In this document: in pieces, positions 28,001 to 50,924 of the stretch
How positions within the stretch are numbered: the first letter of the stretch is position 1
How the letters are laid out: each line of letters begins with the position of its first letter
Assembly (NCBI RefSeq): GCF_032444005.1
Contig: NC_091283.1
Span: 33,108,001 to 33,172,000 of the forward strand
Reading direction: 5' to 3'
DNA: 64,000 bases
Origin: Ranitomeya imitator
Lineage: Eukaryota
Made by a program: the position numbers and the translations under genes
The notes under the pieces: model-generated
Told to the model about the DNA's origin: nothing
The model's database searches: none
Seen by the model: only the letters and a program-made list of their open reading frames with translations

Positions 28001-29451
28001 GTGCACCATGTGGCGCTGTGTTTCCGCTCATTGGATAGACGCACACATTGCTATACATTGTGTACACCAGGTGGCGCTGTGTTTCTGCTCATTAGGTGGA
28101 CGCGCACATTGCTATACATTGTGTACACCAGGTGGCGCTGTGTTTCCGCTCATTGGATGGACGCGCACATTGCTATACATTGTGTACACCAGGTGGCGCT
28201 GTGTTTCTGCTCATTAGGTGGACGCGCACATTGCTATACATTGTGTACACCAGGTGGCGCTGTGTTTCCGCTCATTGGATGGACGCGCACATTGCTATAC
28301 ATTGTGTACACCAGGTGGCGCTGTGTTTCCGCTCATTGGATAGACACACACATTGCTATACACTGTGTGCACCAGGTGGCGCTGTGTTTCTGCTCATTAG
28401 GTGGACGCCCACATTGCTATACATTGTGTACACCAGGTGGCGCTGTGTTTCCGCTCATTGGATGGACGCCCACATTGCTATACATTGTGTACACCAGGTG
28501 GCGCTGTGTTTCTGCTCATTAGGTGGACGCGCACATTGCTATACACTGTGTACACCAGGTGGCGCCGTGTTGTCAGAAGTTTCCTAATTCCTCACTGGAT
28601 GATATCTTTAATGAGGAATAATGTTGGTTTGTTTATCACTTGTGCAACTAATATGATACTTAATGGAAGGACAACCCCTTTAAGAAATATTTACATGAAA
28701 TCGGAAACTCCCTTTAAGTAATGTAACTGCTTTGTTCTCCAGTCCGAGTCTCCTGCTCCCAAGAAGACGACCTGCTGTCTCTTCAGACCTTCCTGTCTCC
28801 GCTGCAGACCCTCTCATTCTCCGGCCCTCTCCACCTCTCGGGGGCCGCACCCCGGGCACCCGGGGATGGTCCTGGCTGGGCCTCCGGAGAAGTGACCGAT
28901 GGCTGTCACGTGTACATGAACCTGAGGGTAAGTGACCGGCGTGTCGATCCTCGAGGACCCTCCCTACCATCACCTACCATGGACGCGTTGTCGGTGTGAT
29001 CCCAGGCAGCCGGGACTGCTGCTTCTATTCCCTGACTGACAGCAGAGATCCTGCAAACTGCAATACAAACTGACAGAACTTTTCCCTTTTATTGATGATG
29101 AAGTTTTAGAACTTTTTTTTTTTTTTTTAAAGTTTTGCTCAGTTAAACTTTTTTTTTCTTTTTTGTTGTTTTTTTTTTTTAACCCTCAAGGGATTGGTGG
29201 ATCCGTCCTCCCAACTCCAGAAACTGCAGTCTAAACTCAGCAAGTTAGAGAATCAGCGGAAAGGCAAGATGGAGGAGGAAGAGGAGACAGAGGTGGGTCC
29301 TCATAGCTGCAGAGCTGGACGCGTCTCCGTGGACGTTCCTGTCTGACTTCTTCTTTATCGTCGTTTCTTCTTTTTTTTTCTTTAGAATTCTCTGCAGACG
29401 AAAATCTCCAGAATACGACGTATAATTTCGACCTTGGAACGTTTGTCTTAG
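10023..29451 (+). CDS. VARS2: Valyl-tRNA synthetase, mitochondrial; 29 coding exons, 3090 nt, 1029 aa
   Basis: Exons: 10023-10169, 10241-10322, 13016-13116, 13632-13753, 14825-14891, 15116-15213, 15292-15373, 15696-15815, 16780-16888, 16962-17050, 17613-17703, 17781-17908, 17980-18083, 19354-19435, 19523-19599, 19895-19973, 20055-20169, 20268-20338, 21428-21553, 22046-22150, 23585-23653, 24643-24721, 24936-25063, 26495-26647, 27121-27321, 27401-27512, 28743-28927, 29191-29292, 29386-29451. All introns are GT-AG with consistent phases. Class I motifs: [13 protein letters not shown] (HIGH), [54 protein letters not shown] (KMSKS). No N-terminal GST-like domain and an Arg-rich N-terminus favour VARS2 over VARS1. 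Confidence 0.96.
10590..12960. repeat. Intronic minisatellite, ~55-bp unit (TATGTGGCCTGTCTGGCACTATGTGGGCACAGTATGGCAGTATGTTGTCTATATA)
   Basis: Tandem units have a variable (TA)n tract. A 444-bp higher-order duplication is present (11480/11924). Confidence 0.96.
15850..16740. repeat. Diverged intronic tandem repeat
   Basis: Motifs such as CCCCTTGACAC-GAGGGGAGAC-TGGAC and GGACCATCCCATTCTGCCAC recur. Confidence 0.7.
17400..17600. repeat. Three tandem copies of a ~70-bp unit
   Basis: TGTCGCGGAGC-GCCTT-TATGCCTGTCC recurs at about 17406, 17475 and 17547. Confidence 0.85.
18190..18865. repeat. Intronic minisatellite, 41-42-bp unit (TACTTTCCGAGTAGGATGACACTATGAAACCTAGACATTTAA)
   Basis: About 16 tandem copies are visible. 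Confidence 0.96.
20829..21327. mobile_element. Non-autonomous TTAA-flanked element (piggyBac-like ends)
   Basis: TTAA/CCCCTTCAC ... GTGAGGGGG/TTAA. The interior resembles the elements at about 39500 and 41554. Confidence 0.75.
22560..23450. repeat. GC-rich minisatellite, 18-19-bp unit (CCCCCCTCGTTCCTCCGGG)
   Basis: Tandem array. All overlapping ORFs between 22517 and 23554 are artefacts. Confidence 0.97.
23835..24540. repeat. Mosaic minisatellite (GAGGCTTCTGCGGTGGAGGTCCCGTGCAGTT, ~31 bp and variants)
   Basis: Tandem variant units are visible. Confidence 0.92.
25111..25332. mobile_element. Kolobok/T2-type MITE
   Basis: TTAA/AGGGATGGTCC ... GGACAATCCCT/TTAA, with an internally palindromic body. 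Confidence 0.8.
25416..26173. mobile_element. PIF/Harbinger-type palindromic MITE
   Basis: TIR GGGTACCGTCACAC / GTGTGACGGTACCC, TAA target duplication at 25413-25415 and 26174-26176, and long internal hairpins. Confidence 0.9.
27895..28565. repeat. Intronic minisatellite, 61-bp unit, about 11 copies
   Basis: TCATTAGGTGGACGCGCACATTGCTATACATTGTGTACACCAGGTGGCGCTGTGTTTCCGC is tandemly repeated. Confidence 0.96.
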
Positions 29452-32490: not shown

Positions 32491-33892
32491 TTAATAACAA
32501 GAAGCAAAGCTCTAAAATCACACGCGAAGACCCCGACATATGACACAAGTAGGTTTTATTGCACATATGAAAAAAAAAAACTATTTTAATGTAATTTTCA
32601 GATTTTTTTTTTTATCAAACCAAAAAACATCACAAACACACTCTGTATGGCACAAAACGCCCCCCGTCAGGAGCCGTGTTCAGTGGACTGGAGAAGGAAC
32701 TGGAAAAGTTATGGAGCTACGAGTGAGAAGTTGTCGGTAATGAGACCACCTAACGTATCACGCGGACAAAACCTTACATATGTGAGAGATGCAGGATGGG
32801 GCTGAAGGGGGTCGGTACAAAAATAAATATATACAAATTCTGGCTTTACTTTATTTATAAAAAAAAAATAAAAATTTGCTCACGGCGGTCAGCGGCAGAT
32901 AGAGGAGTGAAGTCCTGCAAAGTAAAAGATGTGGTTAGTAAAATCAGAAGAATGACGGTTTTCAGGAGTCCGTGTCTTTTGGTGGACTTGGTTCTCACTT
33001 TAGTTTAGCCTCCCGATCGTTAACGCTAAATACCCTACATGGACAAAAGTATGTCACGTCTTAATCACTGGATTCTGGGTTCTCATTTATCCCCTTGCCC
33101 CTGATGTATGACATCGGACCCCACTGCTACTGGATGAGCATGCAAGTCTTCTGAATGTGACGTGAGAAGTAAGCCGCCCCTGGCAATAGCTTATCTTTTC
33201 TAAAGGATCGGGCATGTTGGAACCCAACTATCTGACCCTTCTCTTTCTGTCCCGATATACACTAGCTCGTCTGTCTGTCTCACGGAAATCGACTGGTTTG
33301 GCAATAATGTATGTGGATTGTAGAATGTCCTAGTGAACTTCTAACTTTGCTAAATTCCAGAATTGGTCATTGTGCTTTGTATGTACAAATGTCCATATAT
33401 CAAAAAATGACAAAGATGATTTATTCAATTTCTTCAGCCATGGACCCCATAGACTTACCTCAATGACTAATTACACTCTCCATCATGGATTCATCACCCT
33501 GACTGCTGAACTTGTTTCTGTATAGAACCTGTAGACGAAGACCCAAGCAATCTCATTACTATGCACCCTCCACCATCACGTCGTATGTTTTGTATAGACT
33601 CCTTGTCTAAATGCGTTAATGCAATGGCTGAGCACTAACATCATAATTTTTGGGTGAAGAAACTGCTCTATATGCTTAGTTGGACATGAGTCCTGAAGGT
33701 TTGAAGACCCTCTGCCATCATAGAGAAGCATCTAGCACCTCAATATCGCCTACTACAATCATGGACTAATGTACTTCATGGTTCATGATTACTTGTGGAG
33801 TGAGGGACATGGAGGAAGGCTCAATCATTGGAGAGCATATATAAAGTATTTGCACAAGGGTCCCCGGCAATACATAAACTATAAATGGGGGT

Positions 33893-34152
33893 TCACTGGT
33901 GCTCTTGACCATGACCTGAAGAACTACTACATCTTCCTATTGATCCACCACCACTTGGCCACACTGTACCTTGACTTTGGGATTGTTGGATTTGGGAGAA
34001 ACTTCTTCCTCCTCCTGCTCCTTGATTTGCTGATCCTCCACCAGTTCCACCACTAGATCCATGGCTTTGTGAGACCTGTGAAAATCCGCCGCCAGTTCCT
34101 CCACTACCACCAGTTCCTCCAGAACCTCCACCATGGTTTGATCCTTTATCAG
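33893..34152 (-). CDS. Gly/Ser-rich gene, exon 4 (last coding exon)
   Basis: Acceptor TTTCAATTTCTTTACAG/CT, phase 1. It encodes [35 protein letters not shown]...[14 protein letters not shown], with the TGA at 33895-33893. Confidence 0.8.
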
Positions 34153-37100
34153 CTGTAAAGAAATTGAAAGTCAATGACTAACGGTGTAGTAAAAGTATGT
34201 CTAGAAGAATAATCCCAATTCGGGCCATACTTCAAAAATTTTAGCCGCCATTTTCCACCGCGAGGGGGCTGATCTGTGCACGGCTTCTGCTGACCTACCT
34301 ACAGGACATATATAAAGCTGCAGCCTCGTACTGGCAGCAACCCATGTAACGGACAAGAGAGGGGAACCCATGAGTCACTGACGGAATTGGCTTAGGACTA
34401 AATCTGTTGACGCGGTCTACTAGACTGTGACTTCTTCATTCGCAATTCCTCGAGTAGCATATTTTTAATGCAATCACTGGCACATAAATTGGCTGAAGTC
34501 ACCATGTCGTACAAGGTCAGCTGGTAAGAATTTGTCCGATGGTGCCCGAGTCAAGGGAGGCAGAGCTCGGTCACAAGAGGCAGATCAGCAAAGGTTTAGA
34601 TGGACACCAGACAGCAAGACATGGAAAAAATGCAAGCTGATCTGATACCAAACGGGACCAAACACCAGTTGTTTCTGGTACCTGAGGGATCATATTTTTT
34701 AGGGATGGGGTAAGGGTATTTTAAAAGTCATAGAGGAGAACTTTAAGTAGAGTTTGGATCGGGCACATGCATGACCAGTATGGAATAATATAGGAGGAGA
34801 ACATCGAAAAGGAAAGTGACGCAGGACATCCAGGCCTGTAGTATGTGAATGATAGAAGAACAGTGATCTGAATTAAAAAAAAACTGTTTTAGGTTAAAGG
34901 TTAGGTTAAAAGATTAATTTGAAATATTTTTGGGGGAACTCATCCTAAGAGCATGCAGTCTTAGAAAGTGTGAGCTTCGGTGTGATTCTTACGTTGTCCA
35001 CTCTTATTACATCCTGGGGACACGGGAACATCTTTTGGGTTTACTCCGGCTAGAACAAAAACATAAGTTGGAAAATAAGTTAATATAAAATGTAAAACTT
35101 GGCATTGAGTGGCTTCTACATCTTGTATTCTTTACAATATCTTAGGGAACTGCACAGAGAAACGTGACCTGACCGCTGCTCCCAACTACAAAAGTGTATC
35201 TCCTGACACAAGCCTAAAATCCAAATAAAAAAAAAAATATTATGGTCTATACCAGGTCTGTTTTGACTCCTTATGTGTGGCTACCTAATCAAGCTTCAAT
35301 TACCAGTAAAACCTCTGATGATCTATCATTTCTGTATACTTTAGGAGCTTTTAGTTTTTCGATCTTAAGAGATGTTAAAATGTGTCTGCAACATATCGAC
35401 TGGTATGGATGCTTTGTATTTTGAGGGACTGGGGAACTCAACTGGAGTCCATATAATGATCCTCATAAAGCCATAAACTACTGGGGCCATGAAGTCCCTA
35501 TCATGAGACATCTGCCCCACCAGCTATGACTACGAAGTCCATCACCAGTGTTAAATCTCTTCATTGGGCAAAACAGATCTGAATGTGTTTTACAATGGGT
35601 CATTGCAATGAAGACTACTTTGAATAAATTGGTCAAAAGTTTTAGATGACAAATATTAGGGTAGGACCCCCCCCCCCTCCAAACTATAAATTATTTTATA
35701 TCTATACTTACGTGGTAGCTTAACAGAGATTGTTGAACTGCCGCTGGATCCGGAGCCAGTGCCAAAAGAGCCTCCAACGCCACCGATACTACCACCATGA
35801 ATAATCTGTCCAGAACCCACACTTCCTCCGGAAAACGAGCCTCCTCCAGAATGTTGCCCAAATGAGCCTCCACTTCCTCCAGAAAATGAGCCTCCTCCTG
35901 AGTTCTGCCCAAACGACCCTCCACTTCCTCCAGAAAATGAGCCGCCTCCAGAATTCTGCCCAAATGAGCCTCCACTTCCTCCAGAGAATGAGCCTCCTCC
36001 AGAATTCTGGCCAAATGAGCCACCACTTCCTCCAGAAAATGAGCCTCCTCCTCCAGAATTCTGCCCAAATGAGCCACCGCTTCCTCCAGAAAATGAGCCT
36101 CCTCCTCCAGAACTCTGCCCAAATGAGCCTCCACTTCCTCCAGAGAATGAGCCTCCTCCAGAATTCTGGCTGAATGAGCCTCCAGTTCCTCCAGAAAATG
36201 ATCCTCCACCACCTCCAGGACTCTGACCAAATGAACCTCCAGAAAACGAGCCTCCACCAGAACTCTGCCCAATTGAACCTCCACTTCCTCCCGAGAATGA
36301 GCCTCCTCCAGAACTCTGGCCAAATGAACCTCCTGTGCCTCCACCTGTTCCAATGAATTGTGAACTTCCTCCTCCTCCAGAATTGCTAAGGACATATGGT
36401 ACTCCTCCACCGCCACTTGTAAGGATGCCACTATTACTTTCCATGCTGCCTCCTCGTATAACAGTGTTGCTGTATTGTATATCGGCTTGCACGAGCTGGG
36501 AGCCGCTTCCTCCACCTGCAGATCCACTCATAGCTCCTCCTGAAGATGCAGCTACACCTGCAAAAGCCAACACAAAGGTTATTACGTGATCTCCGTGGCT
36601 CATCATCAATTAAATTATTTCTGAAGGCTTTTGATGTTGAGGAACTTTGCACCTTCATGTCTTATATACTACTCGCATTGAGAGTTGCATTCACAATTCA
36701 GTTTGTTAGATCAGCTCTATGGGCTTATTTATTTGCACTCCTTGCTGGTTCAGTGTCTGGACAGATCGTTCTTGAAAATTGGAATCCATTAGAATTTTTT
36801 CAGCAGCCTCAGAAGAACGATTCTTTAAAAGCTTTTTCCAGGCTTACTATATTGATGATGTATCCATAGAATAGATAATCGATAGCAGACCAGTGGAGGT
36901 CCAACACCTGGGACCCCAACTAATCAGCTGCTTGCAGATCCAGTTGGGGTCATAAATAAACAGTTCTCTGTTCACAATCCTGAAAACAGCCAATTGGTGG
37001 ATGTGCCAGGCGTTCGACCTGCAGCGATCTGATATTGACCATCTATTCTATGGATAGGTCATCATCTTAGTCTTAGAAAACCCCTTTAATGACTACCCTG

Positions 37101-40100
37101 AGAGATGACCACAAATTGCTTTCGAGGCTACTAGGACCATTTATTAAATGTGTTCCAATACAATATCTCATATTGACATTGTGTAATATCTGTCCTGAAG
37201 AAGAGGCCGAAGTAATCTCGAAGGTTTATCGTAAGTTTCTCAGTTGGTCATTAAAAGGCATCTACAACTAAAGACTATCTGCTTGCATCTTTTCCATCTA
37301 CTGGCTAATATAGTACAAAGCACTTTTTTCTTTAAAAAAAATTGCAGAATGGTGAATGCAGCTGTGAAGGTAATCGGCATATAAGCCTTGGTATAACTCA
37401 ACTACACACAGACCCAATGTTATTGACCCATGAATAGCGGAACCATTCCTCATTGCCAGATCCATTTTTGACTCCTTGTATAACTCCTCTCTATACCGTC
37501 CATATCACCATGGCTGCCCCAATATTAATGTCATGGAGATGTTCTCATGTGTTCTAGTAAGAACTGATGTGACTAATGTAGAAAGTGGGCCGCTCTACCA
37601 GTAATGTCGAGAATACTCACTAGAAGAGCCACCGCCGGAAATCTGGACATAGCCCGGCGTCCCATCACATACAGGAAATGCGGCAATGGGATCTGCGAAA
37701 AATAGCGAGTAAACAATGGTGAAAATATCCTAAAATAATACACTACACTACTAATATTAATCTATACATAAGTATATTATCCACATTTATATATCTAGTA
37801 TTTGTCCATTTCAATCACTCTAATATCTAGGTAAAATGTAGTTATACGGTGATAGCTTTGACCACTGTGCCTGCGCTGTTCCTGCGATTTTGGTGCTTAG
37901 TCTTCTGGGGCTCGTGTAACCAATTAGCAACCACTTCCCTAGGACAAAACTGAGATCTGAAGGAAGTTCTCACTTTTCTGGGTGTCAGTTTTGGCAGAAG
38001 AAAGTGAAGGAAGTGGACGCTGATGAGCTGCAGGGCTTGAGTGACATTATGTCATGCAAGCCCCAGGAGACCAGTTGCCGATGTCATAGGAATGGCACAG
38101 GCAACGGAGGTGAGTTTAGCTCTTACATGGAGGAAACATGTTTAAGAAAGGGTTGTCCGAGTAGTGGACAACCGCTTTATGTTTTTCTATTGGACAGTAC
38201 TTTGCCGTAACACGTAACTTACCGGTGGGACCTGTCGGTGTGTAGCTTGGGATCCTGCAATACAACTGAGGAGCCGCATCTGCGAAGATAAAAGCCAACA
38301 TGAAGTAATTCACAATAAACATAAAAAAGTCGACAATATTTGGGATTCCTTCAGGTTATGTTGCAAAACATAATTTGTTGATTTTGGCTTCCCGACAGTC
38401 TGATGGATGAGTGTTTGTGTCGGCCGCATTCTGTACCCGGCACTAATCGCAATCAATCATCTGCTGCAATAATTCCTCCAAGTTTATGTAAGTTCCCGGT
38501 ACGTTAATCTACTTTTGTCTAGATCGTCTTACTCTTGGATCTGAGGTTACGGATTAGAACAGTTGGATAGTTTTGTGTGATTTTCATATTTTGTTTTATA
38601 CTTTTTTTTTTTTTTTGTATCTAGAGAAAGTCATAAGCCTACAAAAATAAGTTTCTAATTCTTGCCACATTTTTCTTTAATCTTCTTTAGCCCACATGTA
38701 TCTAGGCAAAGTCTTACACCAACATAAATCGTTTGCATTTCTTAGGAAATGTTTTATTAGTTCCTTTCTGGAACTTTTGCTTTTTAAGATTTTCTTTGTA
38801 CCTTTTTTTAGGCCACATGTTCCTCAAACATTAGAAAATTGAGGAAAAAATCATAACCCTACATAAGTTATGCCAAAGTAAAAAGCAAATAAGAGGGAAA
38901 AAATGACCGTTTCTAATTTTATAGTTTTTTTTGAGGGGACTTTTTTATGCTACTGTATTACTATTTGCATTCATTTTGTCTTTTACGTTTCCCACTGGTT
39001 TCTTAGAAATCAGAATTTTAGGAAAACCTTAATGCTGAGTAAATCATGTAAAGTGAACCACAAATAATAACATATTCAATCCAAAAAGCAAAATATTGCT
39101 AAATGTAGTCACTTGTTTCTTTTTATCATTTTTCTACCTATTTTACGTTCCTTTTTTATGCCACATAATTACTATGTGAACTTTGGAAATAATCGGACTG
39201 ATATATTATGCAATCTTAGACTTAATACCGGCAAATCTGGTATGAAGAAAGTCTTAGGGTGGAAAAGATTGTAATAACCAGCGTCTTCCTCCCCTTTAGC
39301 CTTAGGCACTGTGTACATGGAACAATAGGGTGCTACAATTATATATAAGGACTATCCTACAATATAACCCGTACCTCAATTATCATGCCTGCTGCAACAT
39401 GTCCTACACACCCTTATACCAAAATTTTGCTACCGAAGCACATAGTTGGAAACTGCCCTTCGTAGCTCCCAAAACCATGGCATTATTCTAACCATTAATC
39501 CCTTTCCGAAATGGAGCGCAACAGTACCCAGATGTCGGACTCCCTCCCTCACCGCTGGAGCCCACATCTTTCCCAGGACATGTCGCTATTTTGAACAGCT
39601 GACATGTGCCTTTAACAGCCGCGGGTGGAATCGCGATCCACCCGCAGCTGTTAACTAGTTTAATACCGTTTTCAATCTAACAGCGGCATTTAATGCGAGC
39701 TTCTGAAAAGTGTGCCAGGAATCTCACCCATCGATAACCCCATCATGTGATCAGGGGTCACCGATGGGTTGGCATGACAACCAGAGGTCTCCAGTAGACC
39801 TCTTTGGTTGTCACTGCTGGATTGCTATGAACGCCCCTCCGGTGGTCGGCGCTCATAGTGAGTGAGCATTTCTGCTACATACATGCGATCTGATCATCTC
39901 CTGTATATAGCAGATCCGATTGGGTTATGGCAGCTTCTATTCTCCCATGGAGGCTATTGAAGCATGCCACAAGTAAAACAAAGTTTTTAAAAATATTCAA
40001 GAAATATAAAAGTTCAAATCAATCCCCTTTCACCCCATTCGAAATAAAACAATGAAAACAAAAAATCAAACATACACCTATTTTGTATTGCCGCGTTCAG

Positions 40101-43100
40101 AATCGCCCTATTTATTAATATAAAAAAAATTAACCCGATCGCTAAACGGCGTTACAAGAAAAAATGGCAAAATGCCAGAATTACGTTTTTTTTGGTTGCC
40201 AAAGGGGGACTTTGACTTGCCAAAAAGTCAAATGTGTCCACTTAAGTCTTTTCACTATTAATGGAGTGAGTAATTTCACCAATTTACTCTCTTTGGTCAT
40301 TTCTAGATTCCCTAATTTAAGCCGGGGGCGAATCGAAGCTTGGGTTCAAGAACGTCATCATTACGCAACTACAAAACTTTTAAAATCTCAAAAATTGATT
40401 TATTTATTTTTTTGCAATTCAACTTTATCACCCCCAAGTAAAAGTACATGGGACGTGCGCTGTGCAAAAATATGCACTGGGGCTCATCACATAGCTGAAA
40501 CCACAGCCCAACACCAACAACTCAGCACCATGGACAGAGAATCAGGTAACGTTAGGGACAGTCCCTAATATCTCCCTAATATTTATTGCAAAATTGGTTT
40601 CTTCTTATTATGGTTCTTTAGAACTAATATGCACTATTGGCATTTCTGTATTTGGTAAAATGTGCAGACGGGAGCACAAAATATATATAGACCAGATGTA
40701 TGCAATATCCAATTACGGTAAGTGCCCAATTTTTAGGAGAAAAAAATAGAAGCAGTTAAAAATTAAATATATAACCATATAAAATCCAGCGAACAATGTA
40801 TTTAAAAAAGTGTAAAACAATAAAATATATATAAAACAATATCAAATTCAGTGACCAATTTCTAAAAAAAAAAGTATAAAAGAGCAATAAAATATATATA
40901 AAACAATATCAAATTCGGTGACCAATTTATAAAAAAAAAAGTATAAAAGAGCAATAAAATATATATATTGTCTGCAGTGTGACTCCTAGAAGTGTGTCCT
41001 AGAAGTGTGAAGATTATGTAGAATTAAAACCAGATAGATGTATACAGGCTGTGCCCTGCTACCTGCCACCATCGCACTCTAACAAGCATCTATTCTTCCG
41101 ACAGGTATGTTCACCCACCCAGCTCTCCTGCTGTCTGTCTATGAAGTGCCCATAGTACATCACCCAGCTTTGCACATAGACTTTCCTCTGCTCCTAGCTT
41201 TCACATGGTATGCCTTTCAGCTAACCCCAGCTTACCCTAGTGTTATTTATGACATTGTTTACTTATATTGCATAGCTCAAGTCTGCATAGACTTCAGTCT
41301 GCAGTGTGAAACCTATAAGTGTGTCCTAGAAGTGTGAAGATTATGTAGAATTAAAACCAGAATTGAGCCAGAAGGGAACTGAAGGTAACTGGACAGTGTC
41401 ACTGTAAACAATGTTTCTGTTTGTTTTCACTTTCACCTCTATAATCCTTCACTTTCTGCTAACTCGCCTGATCCCTACACCAAGTAAGGAACTGTTCATC
41501 TCTTCTTCAATCCTCCCCATCCACCTCACCTCCTCCTCAAAACTGTTCCTTAACCCCTCTGTGACCTTAGACGTACTATCCCGTCGAGGTGCCCTGGGCT
41601 TATCTGACCCTGGATGGGATAGTACGTCATAGCCGATCGGCCGCGCTCACGGGGGGGAGCGCCGCCGATCGCGGCCGGGTGTCAGCTGCTTATCGCAGCT
41701 GACATCCGGCACTATGTGCCAGGAGCGGTCACGGACCGCCCCCGGCACATTAACCCCTGGCACACCGCGATCAAAGATGATCGCGATGTGCCGGCGGTGC
41801 AGGGAAGCACCGCGCAGGGAGGGGGCTCCCTGCGGGCTTCCCTGAGCCCCCCGCAGCAACGCGATGTGATCGCGTTGCTGCGAGGGTCTCACCTCCCTCC
41901 CTGCTCCCTCCAGCCCCGGATCCAAGATGGCCGCGGATCCGGGTCCTGCAGGGAGGGAGGTGGCTTCACAGAGCCTGCTCAGAGCAGGCACTGTGAAGGC
42001 TGCAGCGCTGCATGTCAGATCAGTGATCTGACAGAGTGCTGTGCAAACTGTCAGATCACTGATCTGTGATGTCCCCCCCTGGGACAAAGTAAAAAAGTAA
42101 AAAAAAAATTTTCCAAATGTGTAAAAAAAATAAAAAAAAATATTCCAAAATAATGAAAAAAAAAAAAAAATATTATTCCCATAAATACATTTCTTCATCT
42201 AAATAAAAAAAAAACCAATAAAAGTACACATATTTAGTATCGCCGCGTCCGTAACGACCCGACCTATAAAACTATCCCACTAGTTAACCCCTTCAGTAAA
42301 CACCGTAAGAAAAAAAAAAAAAAACGAGGCAAAAAACAACGCTTTATTATCATACCGCCGAACAAAAAGTGGAATAACACGCGATCAAAAGGACAGATAT
42401 AAATAACCATGGTACCGCTGAAAGCGTCATATTGTCCCGCAAAAAAAGAGCCGCCATACAGCATCATCAGCAAAAAAATAAAAAAGTTATAGTCCTGAGA
42501 ATAAAGCAATGCAAAAACAATTATTTTTTCTGTAAAATAGTTTTTATCGTATAAAAGCGCCAAACCATAAAAAAATGATATAAATGAGGTATCGCTGTAA
42601 TCGTACTGACCCGAAGAATAAAACTGATTTATCAATTTTACCAAACGCGGAACGGTATAAACGCCTCCCCCAATAGAAATTCATGAATAGCTGGCTTTTG
42701 GTCATTCTTCCTCACAAAAATCGGAATAAAAAGCGATCAAAAAATGTCACGTGCCCAAAAATGTTTTCAATAAAAACGTCAACTCGTCCCGCAAAAAACA
42801 AGACCTCACATGACTCTGTGGACCAAAATATGGAAAAATTATAGCTCTCAAAATGTGGTATTGCAAAAAATATTTTTTGCAATAAAAAGGGTCTTTCAGT
42901 GTGTGACGGCTGCCAATCATAAAAATCCGCTAAAAAACTCGCTATAAAAGTAAATCAAACCCCCCTTCATCACCCCCTTAGTTAGGGAAAAATAAAAAAA
43001 ATGTATTTATTTCCATTTTCCCATTAGGGTTAGGGTTAGGGTTAGGGTTAAGGCTACAGTTAGGGTTNNNNNNNNNNNNNNNNNNNNNNNNNNNNNNNNN

Positions 43101-46100
43101 NNNNNNNNNNNNNNNNNNNNNNNNNNNNNNNNNNNNNNNNNNNNNNNNNNNNNNNNNNNNNNNNNNNNNNNNNNNNNNNNNNNNNNNNNNNNNNNNNNNN
43201 NNNNNNNNNNNNNNNNNNNNNNNNNNNNNNNNNNNNNNNNNNNNNNNNNGGTTGGGGCTAAAGTTAGGGTTAGGGTTTAGATTACATTTACGGTTGGGAA
43301 TAGGGTTGGGATTAGGGTTAGGGGTGTGTCAGGGTTAGAGGTGTGGTTAGGGTTTCCGTTGGAATTAGGGTTAGGGGTGTGTTTAGATTAGGGTTTCAGT
43401 TATAATTGGGGGGTTTCCACTGTTTCGGCACATCAGGGGCTCTCCAAACACGACATGGCGTCCGATCTCAATTCCAGCCAATTCTGCGTTGAAAAAGTAA
43501 AACAGTGCTCCTTCCCTTCCGAGCTCTCCTGTGTGCCCAAACAGGGGTTTACCCCAACATATGGGGTATCAGCGTACTCAGGACAAATTGGACAACAACT
43601 TTTGTGGACCAATTTCTCCTGTTACCCTTGGGAAAATACAAAACTGGGGACTAAAAAATAATTTTTGTGGGAAAACAAAAAGATTTTTTATTTTCACGGC
43701 TCTGCGTTATAAACTGTAGTGAAACACTTGGGGGTTCAAAGTTCTCACAACACATCTAGATAAGTTCATTGAGGGGTCTAGTTTCCAATATGGGGTCACT
43801 TGTGGGGGGTTTCTACTGTTTAGGTACATTAGGGGCTCTGCAAACGCAATGTGACGCCTGCAGACCAATCCATCTAAGTCTGCATTCCAAATGATGCTCC
43901 TTCCCTTCCGAGCCATCCCATGCGCCCAAACGGTGGTTCCCCCCCCACATATCAGGTATCAGCGTACTCAGGACAAATTGGACAACAACATTTAGGGTCC
44001 AATTTCTCCTGCTAACCTTGGAAAAATACAAAACTGGGGGCTAAAATATAATTTTTGTGGAAAAAAAATTTTTTTTTATTTGCATGGCTCTGCGTTATAA
44101 ACTGTAGTGAAATACTTGGGGGTTCAAAGCTCTTACAACACATCAAGATGAGTTCCTTAGGGGGTCTACTTTCCAAAATGGTGTCACTTGTGGGGGGTTT
44201 CTACTGTTTAGGTACATTAGGGGCTCTGCAAACGCAATGTGACGCCTGCAGACCATTCCATCTAAGTCTGCATTCCAAATAGCGCTCCTTCCCTTCCGAG
44301 CCCTCCCATGCGCCCAAACGGTGGTTCCCCCCCACATATGGGGTATCAGCGTACTCAGGACAAATTGGACAACAACTTTTGGGGTCCAATTTCTCCTGTT
44401 GCCCTAGGGAAAATACAAAACTGGGGGCTAAAATATAATTTTTGTGGGAAAAAAATTTTGTTTTATTTTTATGGCTCTGCATTATAAACTTCTGTGAAGC
44501 CCTTGGTGGGTCAAAGTGCTCACCACACATCCAGATAAGTTCCTTAGGGGGTCTACTTTCCAAAATGGTGTCACTTGTGGGGGGTTTCAATGTTTAGGCA
44601 CATCAGTGGCTCTCCAAACGCAACATGGCGTCCCATCTCAATTTCTGTCAATTTTGCATTGAAAAGTCAAACTGCGCTCCTTCCCTTCCGAGCTCTCCCA
44701 TGCGCCCAAACAGTGGTTTACTGCCACATATGGGGTATCAGCGTACTCAGGACAAATTGGACAACAACTTTTTGGGTCCAATTTCTCCTGTTACCCTTGG
44801 TAAAATAAAACAAATTGGAGCTGAAGTAAATTGTTTGTGTAAAAAAGTTAAATGTTCATTTTTATTTAAACATTCCAAAAATTCCTATTAAACACCTGAA
44901 GGGTTAATAAACTTCTTGAATGTGGTTTTGAGCACCTTGAGGGGTGCAGTTTTTAGAATGGTGTCACACTTGGGTATTTTCTATCATATAGACCCCTCAA
45001 AATGACTTCAAATGAGACGTGGTCCCTAAAAAAAAATGGTGTTGTAAAAATGAGAAATTGCTGGTCAACTTTTAACCCTTATAACTCCCTAACAAAAAAA
45101 AAAATTGGTTCCAAAATTATGCTGATGTAAAGGAGACATGTGGGAAATGTTACTTATTAAGTATTTTGTGTGACATATCTCTGTGATTTAATTGCATAAA
45201 AATTCAAAGTTTGAAAATTGCGAAATTTTCAAAATTTTCGCCAAATTTCCGTTTTTTTCACAAATAAACGCAGGTACTATCAAAGAAATTTTACCACTAT
45301 CATGAAGTACAATATGTCACGAGAAAACAATGTCAGAATCACCAGGATCCGTTGAAGCGTTTCGGAGTTATAACCTCATAAAGGGACAGTGGTCAGAATT
45401 GTAAAAATTGGCCTGGTCATTGACGTGCAAACCACCCTTGGGGGTAAAGGGGTTAATATACAATCCTCTGTCTCCAAACACAGACAGCCCCCTCATGCCC
45501 TCTCCTGCTCCCACCTGCTAACACTTTCTCTGCTCCTTCTCACTGCTGGATATATCTCTGAAAATCCTGGTCCTCCTCACCACATTCCCACAGTCATTTC
45601 TACCTCCCATTCACGCTCTATCACAACCTTCCGTAACCTCTCTAACCTTATACCCATTCACCCAGCCCCCGCTTCCCCAGTCCCACTAACAGGAGCTCTG
45701 TGGAACGCTCGCTCTGTCTGCAACAAGCTTTCCTACATCCATGATCTTTTTGCTACTACCAAACTTTCCTTCCTCGCCATCACCGAAACCTGGCTCACCC
45801 CTTCTGACAGCCTCTCCTGCTGCACTTTCCTATGGTGGCTTCCACCTTTCTCACCCCCCCCCCCCCCTGCCCCAGCAGCAAACATGGCGGAGGAGTTGGT
45901 TTTCTCTTGTCAGATAACTGCTCCTTCACCCCAATCCCACTGCCACCCTCTGTTACCCTCCCTTCCTTTGAGGTGCACTCTGTGCGCATCTACTCCCCCT
46001 CCAACCTCCAACTGGCTGTCATCTACCGCCCCCAGGGCCAGCCACCACCTTCTTTGACCACTTCACCACCTGGCTACTTAATTTCCTTTCCGCAGACATC

Positions 46101-49100
46101 CCTACTATCATCATTGGCGACTTCAACATCCCCATTGACACTTCCCTCTCAGCTGCCACTAAACTTCTATCTCTCACTTCCTCCTTTGGCCTCACTTAAT
46201 GGTCTTCTACAGCCACCCACAAAGATGGCCACACACTGGACCTCATCTTCACCCGCCTCTGCTCCCTATCTAACCTCTCTAACTCACCTCTTCCTCTCTC
46301 TGACCACAACCTTCTCACATTATCTTCCCTCTCCACTCCATGTCTACAATCCCCACCACACAAACTTTCACACCCTCGCAGAAATCTTAAACATCTTGAC
46401 CTACATTCATTCTCTGAATCCCTCCTCCCTCTCACAGACATAAGTTCCATACACAATGCAGATGACGCTGCCGCTCTATATAACATCCCAATAGCTGTAG
46501 CTTTGGAATCTGCTGCCCCACTTACACATACCAAAGCTCGCAAAATCAACAGACAGCCCTGGCACACCAGCCTGACCAAAGAACTGAAGCGAGCTTCCAG
46601 GGCTGCTGAGCGCAGATGGAAAAGATCCCACTCCAACGAGCACTTCATCGCATTCAAACAGTCCCTCACTATTTTCAAGACCACACTCACCACAGCTAAA
46701 CAAACCTACTTCTCATCTCTCATATCCTCCCTGTCTCACAACCCTAAACTTATTCAACACCTTCAATTCTCTCCTCCGTCCCCCAGCACCTCCCTCCCCA
46801 CTCATCTCATCTGAAGACTTTGCCTCATTTTTCAAGCAGAAGATTGATAGCATTAGAGACAGTTTTGGTCAACAACCCCCAGAGCCCTTCCTCCCGACTT
46901 CCCAGCCCTCCACCTCCAAAACCAACTTCTCCACCATTACAGAAGATCGACTCTCCACTCTACTCTCAAGATCACATCTCACCACCTGTGCACTTGACCC
47001 AATCCCATCCCACTGCATCCAAAACCTCACCACAGTCTTCATCCCAACCCTAACCCATCTCTTCAACCTATCACTAACAACTGGTGTTTTCCCCTCAAGC
47101 TTTAAACATGCCTCAATCACACCTATCGTCAAAAAGCCCTCTCTTGACCCATCCTCTGTATCTAGCTATCGCCCTATATCACTTCTCCCTTATGCCTCCA
47201 AGCTACTGGAAAAATACGTCTACCTTGAACTGTCCTCCCATCTCTCTTCTTGCTCCCTCTTCGACCACTTACAATCTGGCTTCTGGTCACACCACTCCAC
47301 TGAAACTGCCCTAACTAAGGTCACCAATGACCTCTTAACCGCCAAGAGCAAGCGACACTACTCTGTCCTCCTCCTCCTGGACCTGTCGGCTGCCTTTGAC
47401 ACAGTGGACCATTCCCTATTATTACAGACCCTCTCGTCCCTTGGCATCACAGACTTGGCCCTATCCTGGATCTCATCATACCTAACAGACCGGACATTCA
47501 GCATCTCCCACTCACCACCTCCTCACCTCGCCCACTATCTGTCGGAGTCCCACAAGGTTCAGTCCTAGGGCCCCTGCTCTTGTCCATTTACACCTTTGGC
47601 CTGGGACAGCTCCTAGAATCTCATGGCTTTCAGTATCATCTCTATGCTGATGACACACAGATCTACATCTCTGGACCAGATATCACCTCCCTACTAACCA
47701 GAATCCCTCAATGTCTGTCCACTACTTCATCCTTCTTCTCCGCTAGATTTCTGAAACTTAACATGGACAAAACAGAATTCATATTTTCCCCCATCTCCCA
47801 TGACTCCCCCAACGAACCTATCCATTACAGTAAATGGCTGCCCACTCTCCCCAGTCCCACAAGCTCGCTGCCTCGGGGTAATCCTTGACACTGATCTCTC
47901 CTTCAAACCACATATCCAAGCCCTTTCCACTTCCTGCCGACTTCAACTCAAAAATATTTCACGAATCCGTTCATTCCTCAACCAAGAATCTGCATAAACC
48001 CTAGTCCATGCCCTCATCATCTCTCGCCTTGACTACTGCAACTTCCTGCTCTGTGGCCTCCCCTCTAACACTCTCGCACCCCTCCAATCTATTCTAAACT
48101 CTGCTGCCTGACTTATCCACCTGTCCCCCCGCTATTCCCCGGCCTCTCCCCTCTGTCAATCCCTTCACTGGCTCCCATTGCCCAGAGACTCCAGTACAAA
48201 ACCCTAACCATAACATACAAAGCCATCCACAACCTGTCTCCTCCCTACATCTGTGACCTTGTCTCCCGGTACTTCCGTACCTACATGCAGCCTCCGATCC
48301 TCACAAGATCTCCTTCTCTACTCCCCTCTCATCTCCTCTTCCCACAATCGTATACAAGATTTCTCTCGCGTATCACCCCTACTCTGGAACTCTCTACCAC
48401 AACACATCAGACTCTCGTCTACCATCGAAACCTTCAAAAAGAACCTGAAGACCTACCTCTTCCGACAAGCCTACAATCTGCCGTAATCACCGATCAACCA
48501 AACCGCTGCATGACCAGCTCTACCCTCACCTACTGTATCCTCACCCATCCCTTGTAGACTGTGAGCCCTCGCGGGCAGGGTCCTCTCTCCTCCTGTACCA
48601 GTTATGACTTGTATTGGTTAAGATTATTGTACCTGTTTTTATTATGTATACCCCTCCTCACATGTAAAGCGCCATGGAATAAATGGCGCTATAACAATAA
48701 ATAATAATAATAAATAATAATAATATATAAAACTATATCAAATTCAGTGACCAATTTATAAAAAAAAGTACAAAAGCAATAAAATATATATAAAACAATA
48801 TCAAATTCAGTGACCAATTTATAAAAAATAGTATAAAAGAGCAATAAAATATATAAAACAATATCAAATTCGGTGACCAAGTTATAAAAAAAGTATAAAA
48901 GAGCAATAAAATATATATAAAACAATATCACATTCGGTGACCAATTTATAAAAAAAAGTATGAAAGAGCAATAAAATACATATAAAACAATATCACATTC
49001 GGTGACCAATTTATAAAAAAAAGTATGAAAGAGCAATAAAATACATATAAAACAATATCACATTCGGTGACCAATTTATAAAAAAAAGTATGAAAGAGCA

Positions 49101-50852
49101 ATAAAATATACATAAAACAATATCAAATTCAGTGACCAATTTATAAAAAATAGTATAAAAGAGCAATAAAATATATAAAACAATATCAAATTCGGTGACC
49201 AAGTTATAAAAAAAGTATAAAAGAGCAATAAAATATATATAAAACAATATCACATTCGGTGACCAATTTATAAAAAAAAGTATGAAAGAGCAATAAAATA
49301 CATATAAAACAATATCACATTCGGTGACCAATTTATAAAAAAAAGTATGAAAGAGCAATAAAATACATATAAAACAATATCACATTCGGTGACCAATTTA
49401 TAAAAAAAAGTATGAAAGAGCAATAAAATATACATAAAACAATATCAAATTCAGTGACCAATTTATAAAAAATAGTATAAAAGAGCAATAAAATATATAA
49501 AACAATATCAAATTCGGTGACCAAGTTATAAAAAAAGTATAAAAGAGCAATAAAATATATATAAAACAATATCACATTCGGTGACCAATTTATAAAAAAA
49601 AGTATGAAAGAGCAATAAAATACATATAAAACAATATCACATTCGGTGACCAATTTATAAAAAAAAGTATGAAAGAGCAATAAAATATACATAAAACAAT
49701 ATCACATTCGGTGACCAATTTATAAAAAAAGAAAATATATATAAAATATTTAAAATTTAGAATATTAGTTATAAAATGTAAGAAAATGTATACATTATAC
49801 AAATTTAGTGTCCAAGTTAATGAAAAAGTATATGAAAGAGCACTAAATAAATAAACACTTTTATATAACAATTCAGCAATGAATTTACAGAAAAGCGTAT
49901 ATAAAAGAGCAATTTAAACATTAAAAAAGTTATATAACAAATCTGTCTTCAATCTATAGAAAAAAGTGTATATAAAGCAATAAAAATATATAAAAACACT
50001 AATATAACAATTCAGCATCCAATTTATAATTTTTTTTTACAAAAGCAATAATATGTAAAATCTACTTATATAATAATTCAGCATCGATTTGATGAAATAG
50101 TATATAAAAGGTGCAATATACAAAAAACAAGTTTATATAACATACGGTAACAATTGTGTCCAATTTATTTTAAAAAGTATATAAAAAAATTCATATAACA
50201 ATTCAGCGTCCAAGTTATACAAAAAAAGATGTAAAAGAGCAATAACGTATATATAAAAAAAAACAAAAAATCAGTGCTCAATTTATGAAAAAATATAGAA
50301 GTACTGTGCTTGAAAATAAGGAAATAAGATAAAAAAAGTATTTTATATAAATTAATTCTATACATTAATATATAAAATAATTTTTCACTCTATTCCTGCA
50401 ATAGAATATATAGAATATATAATAGAATACAGTATGTAATAGTACATTTGAGAAAACAGTTGGCACACATTAGTTTTCAGTTAGTAAACAATATAAAGAC
50501 CATATACCGAAGAAATTAATAACTAAAGAAAAATAATTGGGTTCAAAAAGATTTAAAAAAAATAAAAAAACTTAACTAAAAATTGAAATAATTATATAGC
50601 ATAAAAATAATAAAAATACAAGAAGATCTTAAGTAAGAAAGATGTAAAAAAAAAGATTGTTCTGCATGCAAAATAAATATTGTTAAAAAATGAATGATGT
50701 AAAAATGGTATACTGTGAAAATAATAGATGCAGAACTGAGATTTCTTCTATATTTCTTAGACATTAATGTCCCGCCGTTTGTCGTACTTACTGCAGACAC
50801 TCAGCACAACGGTGCAGCACAGCAGGGCCCTAATTGGACCAGACCTGCTCAT
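33893..50852 (-). CDS. Secreted glycine/serine-rich glycine-loop protein, four exons, 1224 nt, 407 aa (candidate corneodesmosin-like skin protein)
   Basis: Exons: 50852-50792, 38279-38223, 36557-35712, 34152-33893. All introns are GT-AG and phase 1, and the join is open: [57 protein letters not shown]...([17 protein letters not shown])x10...[21 protein letters not shown]...GHGQEHQ*. The exon 1-2 link spans 12.5 kb and is inferred. Confidence 0.78.
35712..36557 (-). CDS. Gly/Ser-rich gene, exon 3 (846 nt, repeat domain)
   Basis: Acceptor TTTGTGTTGGCTTTTGCAG/GT and donor CCAC/GTAAGT. The ten repeat units are spaced 51, 51, 51, 54, 54, 51, 57, 42 and 51 bp apart, all multiples of three. Confidence 0.9.
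38223..38279 (-). CDS. Gly/Ser-rich gene, exon 2 (57 nt)
   Basis: Acceptor TTGGCTTTTATCTTCGCAG/AT and donor CCACCG/GTAAGT. This symmetric phase-1 exon encodes (N)[18 protein letters not shown]. Confidence 0.75.
39498..40330. mobile_element. Diverged TTAA-type non-autonomous element fragment
   Basis: It starts TTAA/TCCCTTTCC and resembles the 20829 and 41554 elements (GATCCACCCGCAGCTGTTAA; TCGCTAAACGGCGT). The right end is unclear. Confidence 0.55.
41554..45452. mobile_element. 3.9-kb non-autonomous piggyBac-like element with internal tandem blocks and TTAGGG-like repeats
   Basis: TTAA/CCCCTCTG ... GTAAAGGGG/TTAA. Both flanks are contiguous L2 coding sequence. Internal blocks of several hundred bp repeat at 43420-44800. 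The element spans the N gap. Confidence 0.8.
43068..43249. other. Assembly gap (182 N)
   Basis: A run of N flanked on both sides by TTAGGG-like repeats. Confidence 0.99.
48723..49740. repeat. AT-rich minisatellite, ~60-65-bp unit; the same repeat occurs at 40800-40977
   Basis: AAAACAATATCACATTCGGTGACCAATTTATAAAAAAAAGTATGAAAGAGCAATAAAATACATAT is tandemly repeated on both sides of the L2. Confidence 0.93.
50792..50852 (-). CDS. Gly/Ser-rich gene, exon 1 coding part (signal peptide)
   Basis: ATG at 50852 gives [20 protein letters not shown], then a phase-1 donor TGCA/GTAAGT. It has a basic n-region and a hydrophobic core, and with exon 2 it forms a C-N-A/A-P cleavage site. Confidence 0.75.
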
Positions 50853-50905
50853 CCTGACGGTTGGATGTTCCCTTTTTTTTTTGGAGCACAGGATCCCTTC
50901 CCCAT

Positions 50906-50924
50906 TGAGTCAGTGTCATATATA
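50906..50924 (-). promoter_or_regulatory. TATA box and AP-1 site upstream of the Gly/Ser-rich gene
   Basis: Minus-strand TATATAT at 50924-50918 and TGACTCA at 50912-50906, about 65-70 bp upstream of the ATG. Confidence 0.6.

What the first reader, a model, noticed from the sequence alone, without database searches (positions are those of the whole stretch)
33893..50924. Four-exon gene for a secreted glycine-loop protein, convergent with VARS2: candidate amphibian corneodesmosin-like or novel skin structural protein
Seen in sequence: four minus-strand exons with strong GT-AG sites, all phase 1, join into an open 407-aa protein. It has a signal peptide, a short N-terminal segment with one Cys, ten GGSFGQ[NS]SGGG(G)SFSGGS repeats, and a Gly/Ser/Gln-rich tail with a second Cys. 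Repeat length changes are all multiples of 3, which suggests selection on the reading frame. Established knowledge: in the human MHC class I region VARS2 is followed by SFTA2, MUCL3, MUC21, MUC22, C6orf15 and CDSN. SFTA2, C6orf15 and CDSN lie on the strand opposite VARS2, and CDSN is a secreted Gly/Ser-loop adhesion protein of cornified epithelia. Inference: this gene may be a CDSN/C6orf15-type orthologue or a frog-specific secreted loricrin-like protein. The motif [11 protein letters not shown] resembles a GYSQVSYSSGS stretch I recall from human CDSN, which needs checking. Dermokine/suprabasin-like proteins and skin glue or cocoon proteins are alternatives.
Basis: partly seen in the sequence, partly recalled or inferred. 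Interest (0 to 1): 0.85.

Follow-up and report, generated by a model that had tools for sequence, protein, structure and literature searches.

The report
Frog corneodesmosin-like glycine-loop protein gene
This is a real, strongly expressed poison-frog gene for a secreted, glycine-rich "loop" protein; it sits where mammals keep the skin-cohesion gene corneodesmosin, may be its amphibian counterpart, and is wrongly framed in the public annotation.

Summary
RNA contigs from four runs show seven minus-strand exons, all phase 1, not four.

The product is 436 aa. It has a signal peptide, a conserved Cys-x19-Cys loop, ten Gly/Ser/Phe repeats, and a Gln/Lys-rich tail. Differences between repeat units are almost all synonymous in the glycine frame (pN/pS 0.08).

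The assembly gap lies in intron 1. RNA joins exon 1 directly to exon 2 across it.

The organism is Ranitomeya imitator. The public model CAJ0941816.1 is frame-shifted by an artificial 22-nt intron. A partial orthologue exists in Staurois parvus.

The gene is convergent with a ValRS (VARS2-type) gene, as CDSN is in mammals. Corneodesmosin homology is suggested but not proven. The support is two short collinear motif matches (p about 0.002-0.03) and language-model nearest-cluster hits. No HMMER hit was found, and mammalian CDSN has two exons. The expressing tissue is unknown. Expression is very high in some runs and absent from one that holds VARS2.

The parts
50918..50924 (-). TATA box (TATATAT) about 65 nt upstream of the ATG. 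A TGACTCA (AP-1-type) heptamer lies just downstream of it.
   Evidence: Sequence read. An RNA contig in X2 extends at least 91 nt upstream of 50792. Function as a promoter is inferred.
50792..50852 (-). Exon 1 coding part (61 nt, aa 1-20). It encodes the signal peptide and ends in phase 1 with donor GTAAGT.
   Evidence: The loose end at 38279 in X1, X6 and X2 equals window 50792-50821. The only strongly hydrophobic window of the protein is here.
38280..50791 (-). Intron 1 (about 12.5 kb). It holds the assembly gap at 43068-43249, TTAGGG repeats beside the gap, and LINE-like reverse-transcriptase fragments on the + strand at about 45.4-48.6 kb.
   Evidence: RNA joins exon 1 directly to exon 2.
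38223..38279 (-). Exon 2 (57 nt, aa 21-39). It carries the start of the mature protein and the first Cys of the loop (Cys28).
   Evidence: Joint 37692>38223 in all four runs. Splice sites.
37621..37692 (-). It carries the second loop Cys (Cys48) and the conserved PVCDGxPG motif.
   Evidence: Joints 36557>37621 and 37692>38223 in all four runs. Conserved in Staurois P0002.
35712..36557 (-). Exon 4 (846 nt, aa 64-345). It has a non-repeat Gly/Ser lead-in followed by the repeat array.
   Evidence: Contigs are continuous over 36141-36554 with no gap, so the 22-nt intron at 36437-36416 in public model CAJ0941816.1 is not real. Only this frame is stop-free over the whole exon.
35820..36333 (-). Ten tandem units of 14-19 aa, consensus [17 protein letters not shown]. 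Phe anchors fall every 8-10 residues.
   Evidence: TRF period 51, 10 copies. Units are listed. pS 0.366 against pN 0.029 in this frame. In-frame length variants in RNA: +3 nt after 35839 in all runs and -3 nt at 36044 in X6.
34993..35049 (-). It carries the third Cys of the mature protein (Cys359) and the only N-x-S sequon (NKS).
   Evidence: Joints 34152>34993 and 35049>35712 in all four runs..
33970..34152 (-). Exon 6 (183 nt, aa 365-425). It is Gly/Ser/Thr/Gln-rich and contains [11 protein letters not shown]. The donor is caag|gtacag.
   Evidence: Joint 33528<33970 (CT..AC with cut +2) in X1, X6 and X2 at depth 304-973. A matching loose end is seen in X5.
33893..33969 (-). It is the start of intron 6 and would be read through only in unspliced RNA.
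   Evidence: The unspliced contig 33688-33985 has depth 39 against 973 spliced in X1, and 21 against 340 in X2.
33494..33528 (-). Exon 7 coding part. It encodes the last 11 residues (…GSIQKQVQQSG) and the stop TGA at 33496-33494.
   Evidence: Joint.
33400..33493 (-). 3' UTR with AATAAA at 33425-33420. The exact 3' end is not resolved.
   Evidence: Contigs run on below 33500.
12994..29346 (+). Neighbouring ValRS gene of VARS2 type, with no GST-like N-terminal part seen. It is convergent with the glycine-loop gene, and their 3' ends are about 4 kb apart.
   Evidence: ORF fragments with ValRS motifs. Pfam tRNA-synt_1 and Anticodon_1 hits. In GCA_958301615.1 a 1133-aa tRNA-synt_1/Anticodon_1 gene lies convergent to it.

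Best explanation
This is a bona fide seven-exon gene of Ranitomeya imitator, with every intron in phase 1. It encodes a 436-aa precursor.

The precursor has these parts, in order:
- a 20-aa signal peptide;
- a short N-terminal module with two cysteines 19 residues apart, probably forming a disulfide loop;
- a roughly 270-aa glycine-loop domain, in which Phe or Ile anchors are spaced 8-10 residues apart in Gly/Ser and include ten near-identical 17-aa units;
- a small Pro-rich exon with a third cysteine and one N-glycosylation sequon;
- a Gly/Ser/Gln tail that ends in a Gln/Lys-rich peptide.

The mature protein is about 37 kDa, basic (pI about 8.5) and predicted to be disordered.

The most likely function is extracellular cohesion or coating of the outer epithelium, working as corneodesmosin does. 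In that model the flexible glycine loops of neighbouring molecules interdigitate in homophilic, Velcro-like binding. The odd third cysteine and the Gln/Lys tail would allow covalent fixing by disulfide or transglutaminase links.

By position, strand and architecture it is the frog counterpart of the mammalian CDSN gene. True orthology is probable but unproven.

Shown here: the exons, splicing, reading frame, selection on that frame, high and restricted expression, a ranid orthologue, and the VARS2 neighbourhood. Inferred: secretion, the disulfide loop, the adhesive mechanism, cross-linking, skin expression and CDSN homology.
For: - Splicing: five GT-AG joints in four runs, plus the exon 1 overhang.
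- Frame: pN/pS is 0.08 among repeat units in the Gly frame, against 5.3 and 1.8 in the other two frames. All indels between units and between individuals are 3n.
- Expression: exon word depth is about 250-1000, with introns at 4-60. Run X11 holds VARS2 exons (share 0.17) but none of this gene (0.00).
- Secretion: there is a single N-terminal hydrophobic segment, small residues at -3 and -1, and no other hydrophobic window. The segment is conserved in Staurois.
- Orthologue: Staurois parvus CAI9595207.1, E=1e-16, 45% identity, with the same C-x19-C spacing and the PVCDGxPG motif.
- Synteny: the gene is convergent with ValRS. In mammals the order is VARS2(+) ... C6orf15(-), CDSN(-) (PMC4753418).
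- CDSN resemblance: the N-terminal motif has p 0.006-0.009. The [11 protein letters not shown] motif scores 5/3000. The order of the parts is collinear. A 'corneodesmosin' cluster ranks 2 and 1 of 7.7 million clusters for the two frog N-termini. The mature frog protein is basic (pI about 8.5), and human CDSN is described as a basic glycoprotein in a title cited.
Against: - No CDSN protein, or any protein other than the two frog ones, reached E<=0.001 with the 103-aa N-terminus against 1.84 billion representatives. Word-based searches also found none.
- The R. imitator N-terminus alone does not beat shuffles against the human peptide (p=0.15).
- The 36-aa stretch around GYSQVSYSSGS aligns no better than chance.
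- Atlas scores of 0.75-0.78 are below the tool's 0.9 level. The other near clusters are arthropod cuticle proteins, so composition may be driving the match.
- Mammalian CDSN has two exons (PMC13343795), while this gene has seven.
- The tissue of the expressing runs is unknown.
- A 2010 survey found no corneodesmosin in frogs (PMC2967472).
Confidence: 0.55

Rival explanations
1. The gene is a secreted glycine-rich gene specific to anurans or neobatrachians and shares no ancestry with CDSN. On this reading the resemblance is convergent low-complexity composition plus chance short motifs, and the position beside VARS2 is coincidental.
For: There is no HMMER-detectable similarity to any non-frog protein. 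The exon structure differs from mammalian CDSN (PMC13343795). The motif statistics are weak and partly post hoc. The Atlas neighbours are mostly arthropod cuticle or resilin-like proteins.
Against: Two separate motifs match in collinear order. The first sits directly after the signal peptide in both proteins. The strand and neighbourhood are the same as for CDSN (PMC4753418). CDSN is the only chordate family among the nearest Atlas clusters, and this holds for both frogs.
Confidence: 0.3
2. The protein is not an epidermal cohesion factor. Instead it is a bulk secreted material, such as a component of mucous or granular gland secretion, an adhesive or glue, egg-jelly or cocoon-like material, or a gut coat.
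For: Expression is very high. The regular silk- or resilin-like repeats have arthropod structural proteins as nearest feature neighbours. Dendrobatid tadpoles adhere to the parent's back (general knowledge). The tissue of the runs is unknown.
Against: An orthologue exists in a ranid with a different reproductive biology. Phe-anchored glycine loops and a Gln/Lys tail are typical of keratinocyte differentiation proteins (established knowledge of loricrin, keratins and CDSN). The CDSN-type locus also points to epidermis.
Confidence: 0.15
3. The first reader's four-exon, 407-aa product, or the public model CAJ0941816.1 with its Glu/Val/Leu-rich frame, is the real protein.
For: Both frames are open over the repeat region.
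Against: No run shows the exon-skipping joints, and all four show exons 3, 5 and 7. Contigs are continuous across the 22-nt 'intron' of the public model. Substitutions between repeats are non-synonymous in the alternative frames, with ratios of 5.3 and 1.8.
Confidence: 0.03

Closest known systems
Corneodesmosin (CDSN), mammalian MHC class I region
   Same: Both are secreted and disordered, and the mature frog protein is basic, as human CDSN is described. In both, the signal peptide is followed within about 10 residues by a Cys-bounded Pro-rich loop (human [12 protein letters not shown]…C, Staurois CKEPNYMPSSPND…C). A Gly/Ser loop domain with aromatic anchors comes next, and both contain a G[FY]SQVSxSxGS motif. 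Both genes lie on the strand opposite VARS2 in the same framework segment.
   Different: The frog gene has seven phase-1 exons against two. The product is 436 aa against about 530-570. It has a very regular 17-aa repeat array, only three cysteines in the mature protein, and no detectable counterpart of the CDSN C-terminal half. There is no database-level sequence significance.
Glycine-loop keratinocyte proteins (loricrin; keratin 1/10 end domains)
   Same: Both have quasi-repeats in which aromatic or aliphatic anchors are separated by runs of Gly/Ser. Loricrin also has Gln/Lys-rich ends suited to transglutaminase.
   Different: Loricrin and keratins are intracellular, lack a signal peptide, and lie in the EDC or keratin clusters. 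Loricrin has a single coding exon.
Dermokine / suprabasin (SSC cluster, human 19q13.1)
   Same: They are secreted products of stratified epithelia encoded by multi-exon genes. Dermokine has a Gly/Ser-rich region.
   Different: They lie at a different locus. SBSN has no sauropsid orthologues in Ensembl (PMC7831088). No sequence or Atlas signal was seen.
C6orf15 (STG) and PSORS1C2, CDSN's neighbours
   Same: They have the same strand and chromosomal segment and are small secreted proteins.
   Different: From memory, C6orf15 has Trp/Asn/Pro-type repeats and no Cys loop, and PSORS1C2 is short and Pro-rich. Neither was tested here.
Arthropod cuticle, resilin and silk-like Gly-rich proteins
   Same: They are the nearest neighbours of the repeat exon by language-model features. 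They are secreted structural low-complexity proteins.
   Different: They are unrelated taxa. The scores are 0.55-0.67, which is a resemblance of composition only.

Membership tests
Corneodesmosin (CDSN) | Secreted: N-terminal signal peptide and no transmembrane segment | tested here: met
   The only hydrophobic 15-aa window is at aa 5-23 (KD 2.1); elsewhere the maximum is 0.89. The segment is conserved in Staurois. This is a heuristic, because SignalP is not available.
Corneodesmosin (CDSN) | Gly/Ser-rich glycine-loop domain with aromatic anchors following the N-terminus | tested here: met
   The mature protein is 36% Gly, 24% Ser and 6% Phe. Anchors are spaced 8-10 residues apart over about 200 aa.
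Corneodesmosin (CDSN) | Significant sequence similarity to known CDSN proteins | tested here: inconclusive
   There was no hit in the exhaustive phmmer search or the word searches. Against human fragments printed in PMC4422860 and PMC3940659, the N-terminal loop gives p=0.006 for Staurois, 0.15 for R. imitator and 0.009 for the profile. The 11-mer scores 5/3000 but was chosen post hoc. The Atlas 'corneodesmosin' cluster ranks 2 and 1, at scores of 0.78 and 0.75. No full-length CDSN sequence could be obtained from the tools.
Corneodesmosin (CDSN) | Locus: MHC framework segment next to VARS2, on the opposite strand | tested here: met
   ValRS lies on the + strand at 13-29 kb, convergent with this gene. 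The bat order is VARS2(+) ... C6orf15(-), CDSN(-), PSORS1C2(-), CCHCR1(-) (PMC4753418). Other scan notes place PSMB8 and CLIC1 within 4 Mb; I did not check these.
Corneodesmosin (CDSN) | CCHCR1 / TCF19 / POU5F1-type genes on the far side | not testable with these tools
   The window ends 13 kb upstream of exon 1. Only transposon-like ORFs are seen at 52-64 kb. No frog genome DNA could be fetched.
Corneodesmosin (CDSN) | Compact two-exon gene (typical of mammals, not strictly defining) | tested here: not met
   The frog gene has seven exons over 17.4 kb. Sheep CDSN has two exons in 4.6 kb (PMC13343795). In both genes the first exon ends at the end of the signal peptide; for the human gene this rests on memory and was not checked.
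Corneodesmosin (CDSN) | Expression in cornifying keratinocytes and location in corneodesmosomes | not testable with these tools
   The runs are coded and no tissue is given. Only restricted, very high expression is shown.
SEDC / loricrin-type cornified-envelope genes | Single coding exon, no signal peptide, location in the epidermal differentiation complex | tested here: not met
   The gene has seven coding exons, a signal peptide and an MHC-linked locus. The criteria are those of PMC9365767.
MUC21 / MUC22 / MUCL3 mucins of the same mammalian segment | Ser/Thr/Pro-rich tandem repeats with a transmembrane anchor | tested here: not met
   The mature protein has 3.4% Thr and 3.6% Pro and no second hydrophobic segment.
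Dermokine | Locus between KRTDAP and SBSN; conserved C-terminal module | not tested
   No dermokine sequence was available. The locus differs, since this gene lies beside VARS2. Dermokine does not appear among the Atlas neighbours.

The most novel reading that the evidence does not exclude
The gene is the true amphibian orthologue of corneodesmosin. In that case the corneodesmosome adhesion protein predates amniotes, contrary to the published statement that frogs lack it (PMC2967472). The ancestral gene would have been a multi-exon, phase-1 gene that was later compacted to two exons. Frog skin sloughing would then use a CDSN-type cohesion and release system that can be studied genetically.
Probability: 0.45. 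Interest if true: 0.6.

Novelty: new member of a known kind. Interest (0 to 1): 0.45.

Why it matters
The work corrects a mis-framed public gene model and supplies an RNA-supported structure for an abundant frog transcript.

If the CDSN link holds, the origin of a key skin-barrier adhesion protein moves back to the tetrapod ancestor. That would give a molecular handle on the single-layered amphibian stratum corneum and its periodic sloughing. Sloughing is relevant to water balance and to chytrid infection of the keratinised layers.

If the link does not hold, the gene is still an example of convergent evolution of secreted glycine-loop material, and its 17-aa repeat is under clear purifying selection.

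Tried and rejected
- Pfam on exon 4, exon 6 and both frog N-termini gave no family.
- Word-indexed protein searches found only the species' own mis-framed model. The queries were the exon 4 lead-in, whole exon 4, and the N-terminus at E<=10.
- The exhaustive phmmer search found one ranid partial orthologue and one spurious bacterial repeat protein, P0003, which I rejected.
- DNA of the Staurois and R. imitator contigs could not be fetched because the files are too large. Orthologous exon structure and wider synteny therefore could not be examined.
- I checked the strong negative GC skew at 46-48 kb as a possible hidden glycine-rich exon or paralogue between exons 1 and 2. It is a C-rich LINE-like element on the + strand.
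- The loose ends at 33936, 34002, 36333, 38141 and 38171 match nothing in the window. I treated them as graph branches at low-complexity or repeat words, or as alleles, and not as isoforms.
- The apparent joint at 33501 is an edge effect of a synonymous A/G difference at 33500.
- An HMM of the two frog N-termini against the 57-aa human fragment fails once the Gly/Ser part is included, because of bias correction.
- Literature searches found no paper describing an amphibian CDSN.
Full report
**The observation**

The repeat array is real. Tandem Repeats Finder gives a 51-nt period in 10 copies at 35820-36333. At protein level there are ten units of 14-19 aa around [17 protein letters not shown]. 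While reading the introns I saw two further candidate exons with good splice sites that keep the frame: 37692-37621 (72 nt) and 35049-34993 (57 nt).

**RNA evidence**

Four public runs that hold the locus were laid on 33500-38500. All four show intron-skipping joints with CT..AC ends, which is GT..AG on the minus strand. The joints are at 34152>34993, 35049>35712, 36557>37621 and 37692>38223.

- A further joint, 33528<33970, has depth 304-973 in X1, X6 and X2, and X5 has a matching loose end.
Unspliced depth there is 39 against 973 in X1 and 21 against 340 in X2, the same as background intron depth.
- The overhang at 38279 in three runs is identical to window 50792-50821. This proves the exon 1 to exon 2 junction across the 12.5-kb intron.

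**The assembly gap**

The gap at 43068-43249 lies inside intron 1. RNA joins exon 1 directly to exon 2, so the gap neither hides an exon of the main transcript nor affects the frame. In a second assembly (GCA_958301615.1) the same gene lies on one 453-kb contig and spans 14.8 kb.

**The product**

The seven-exon CDS has exons of 61, 57, 72, 846, 57 and 183 nt plus a final exon, all phase 1. It gives 436 aa, with stop TGA at 33496-33494 and AATAAA at 33425.

- Hydropathy shows a single hydrophobic segment at aa 5-23. Ser at -3 and Cys at -1 before the exon 1/2 boundary make a plausible cleavage site after residue 20.
- The mature protein is 416 aa, about 37 kDa, with pI 8.5. It is 36% Gly, 24% Ser, 7% Gln and 6% Phe.
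- Cysteines are at 28, 48 and 359, there is one NKS sequon, and the tail ends …SQSQGSIQKQVQQSG.

**Which frame is translated**

The repeat region is also open in another frame, and the public model uses that frame. P0001 (CAJ0941816.1, 'unnamed protein product, partial', Ranitomeya imitator) is identical through exons 1-3 and the start of exon 4. It then shifts frame through a 22-nt 'intron' at 36437-36416 and skips exon 5.

- RNA contigs are continuous over 36141-36554, so that model is wrong.
- Independently, among six 17-aa units pS is 0.366 and pN is 0.029 (ratio 0.08) in the glycine frame, against ratios of 5.3 and 1.8 in the other two frames.
- Length differences between units, and between individuals (+3 nt after 35839 in all runs, -3 nt at 36044 in X6), are multiples of three.

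**Organism, neighbours, expression**

P0001 identifies the species as Ranitomeya imitator, and an earlier scan note agrees. On the + strand at about 13-29 kb lie ValRS exons, with Pfam tRNA-synt_1 and Anticodon_1 hits. The other assembly shows a convergent 1133-aa ValRS gene with no GST-like domain, which is the VARS2 type.

Exon word depths are about 250-1000, and introns were assembled at 4-60, so the gene is very highly expressed in those libraries. Run X11 holds VARS2 exons (share 0.17) but none of this gene (0.00), so expression is restricted. Tissues are not disclosed.

**Relatives**

The exhaustive phmmer search used the 103-aa N-terminus against 1.84 billion representatives. It found only P0001, a partial Staurois parvus protein and a spurious bacterial repeat protein.

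- The Staurois protein is CAI9595207.1, 92 aa, E=1e-16, 45% identity.
- The two frogs share the signal peptide, identical C-x19-C spacing and PVCDGxPG. The gene is therefore at least as old as the split between hyloid and ranoid frogs.
- Word-based searches and Pfam gave nothing more.
- The libraries evidently hold few annotated frog proteomes, so absence elsewhere is not informative.

**Is it corneodesmosin?**

No tool could return a CDSN sequence. Two papers print human fragments:

- [26 protein letters not shown], labelled 'Corenodesmosin' (PMC4422860).
- DisProt DP00706 segments 58-105 and 111-175, the latter beginning GYSQVSYSSGS (PMC3940659). They overlap the first peptide consistently at residues 58-59.

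Smith-Waterman alignment against shuffles gave the following.

- Human [12 protein letters not shown] against Staurois CKEPNYMPSSPND: 29/5000.
- The same human peptide against R. imitator: 761/5000.
- The 57-aa fragments: 39/5000 and 134/5000.
- A two-frog HMM against the peptide: 45/5000. It fails when the Gly/Ser part is added.

The two motifs are collinear, and the first lies directly after the signal peptide in both proteins. By language-model features, 'corneodesmosin' (97 chordate members) is rank 2 (0.78) for the R. imitator N-terminus and rank 1 (0.75) for Staurois. The rest are arthropod cuticle proteins, and scores under 0.9 are leads only.

Synteny agrees. In a bat the order is VARS2(+), DPCR1(+), MUC21(+), C6orf15(-), CDSN(-), PSORS1C2(-), CCHCR1(-) (PMC4753418).

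Evidence against:
- Mammalian CDSN has two exons (PMC13343795).
- The frog protein has few cysteines.
- There is no visible counterpart of the CDSN C-terminal half.
- A 2010 survey reported no frog corneodesmosin (PMC2967472).

I therefore call it CDSN-like and a candidate orthologue with probability of about 0.45-0.5. I do not file it as a proven member.

**Mechanism**

Only the anatomy is shown. By analogy with glycine-loop proteins (established knowledge of CDSN, loricrin and the keratin end domains), the Phe-anchored loops would mediate reversible homophilic cohesion between apposed surfaces. The conserved N-terminal loop would be a folded or docking element. The unpaired Cys359 and the Gln/Lys tail would allow covalent anchoring. 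The main alternatives are a gland secretion or adhesive role, and a lineage-specific origin.

**Verdict**

The gene and the protein class are confirmed, the gene model is corrected, and the public annotation is shown to be wrong. The CDSN reading remains plausible but unproven. The finding is of moderate interest as a new member of a known kind.

Noticed in passing
window 36416-36437 (minus strand), public protein CAJ0941816.1: The public R. imitator gene model introduces a 22-nt 'intron' in exon 4 and skips exon 5. This yields a Glu/Val/Leu-rich out-of-frame product. RNA contigs contradict it.
   Followed up: yes
window 4370-8236 (+ strand): A 34-nt tandem array of about 115 copies at 83% match is C-rich. 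It stays free of stop codons in all three + frames for about 1300 codons and would read as Pro/Ser/Thr-rich 34-aa super-repeats. It could be a satellite or a mucin- or proline-rich-like exon upstream of VARS2.
   Followed up: partly
window 1-3353: A 30-nt (or 57-60-nt) tandem array of about 112 copies runs off the window start. It has strong negative GC skew and about 8% indels, so it is probably a satellite.
   Followed up: no
window 43024-43067 and 43301-43386: Interstitial telomere-type repeats, (TTAGGG)n and degenerate copies, lie on both sides of the assembly gap at 43068-43249 inside intron 1.
   Followed up: no
window 45389-48557 (+ strand): LINE-like endonuclease and reverse-transcriptase ORF fragments lie in intron 1. 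They explain the C-rich skew at 46-48 kb.
   Followed up: partly
window 10590-12959, 22584-23451, 23836-24524 and 27904-28571: Several long minisatellites with 55-, 19-, 15/31- and 61-nt periods lie in the first intron or promoter region and in later introns of the ValRS gene.
   Followed up: no
window 56992-57770 (minus strand) and 59084-59482 (minus strand): Tc1/mariner-type transposase remnants, and an ORF that looks like a GIY-YIG endonuclease of a Penelope-like element, lie upstream of the gene. No host exon was recognised in 52-64 kb.
   Followed up: no
window 50904-50906 (minus strand): An upstream ATG would open an 18-codon uORF whose TGA overlaps the main ATG. It lies upstream of the likely start site (about 30 nt after the TATA box), so it is probably not in the mRNA.
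   Followed up: no
window 33500, 34006 and 36434: Every run in which they were read differs from the assembly at these sites (33500 A/G, seen in contig overhangs; 34006; 36434). The change at 33500 is synonymous. The other assembly's model also carries the 33500 variant. These are ordinary polymorphisms.
   Followed up: partly
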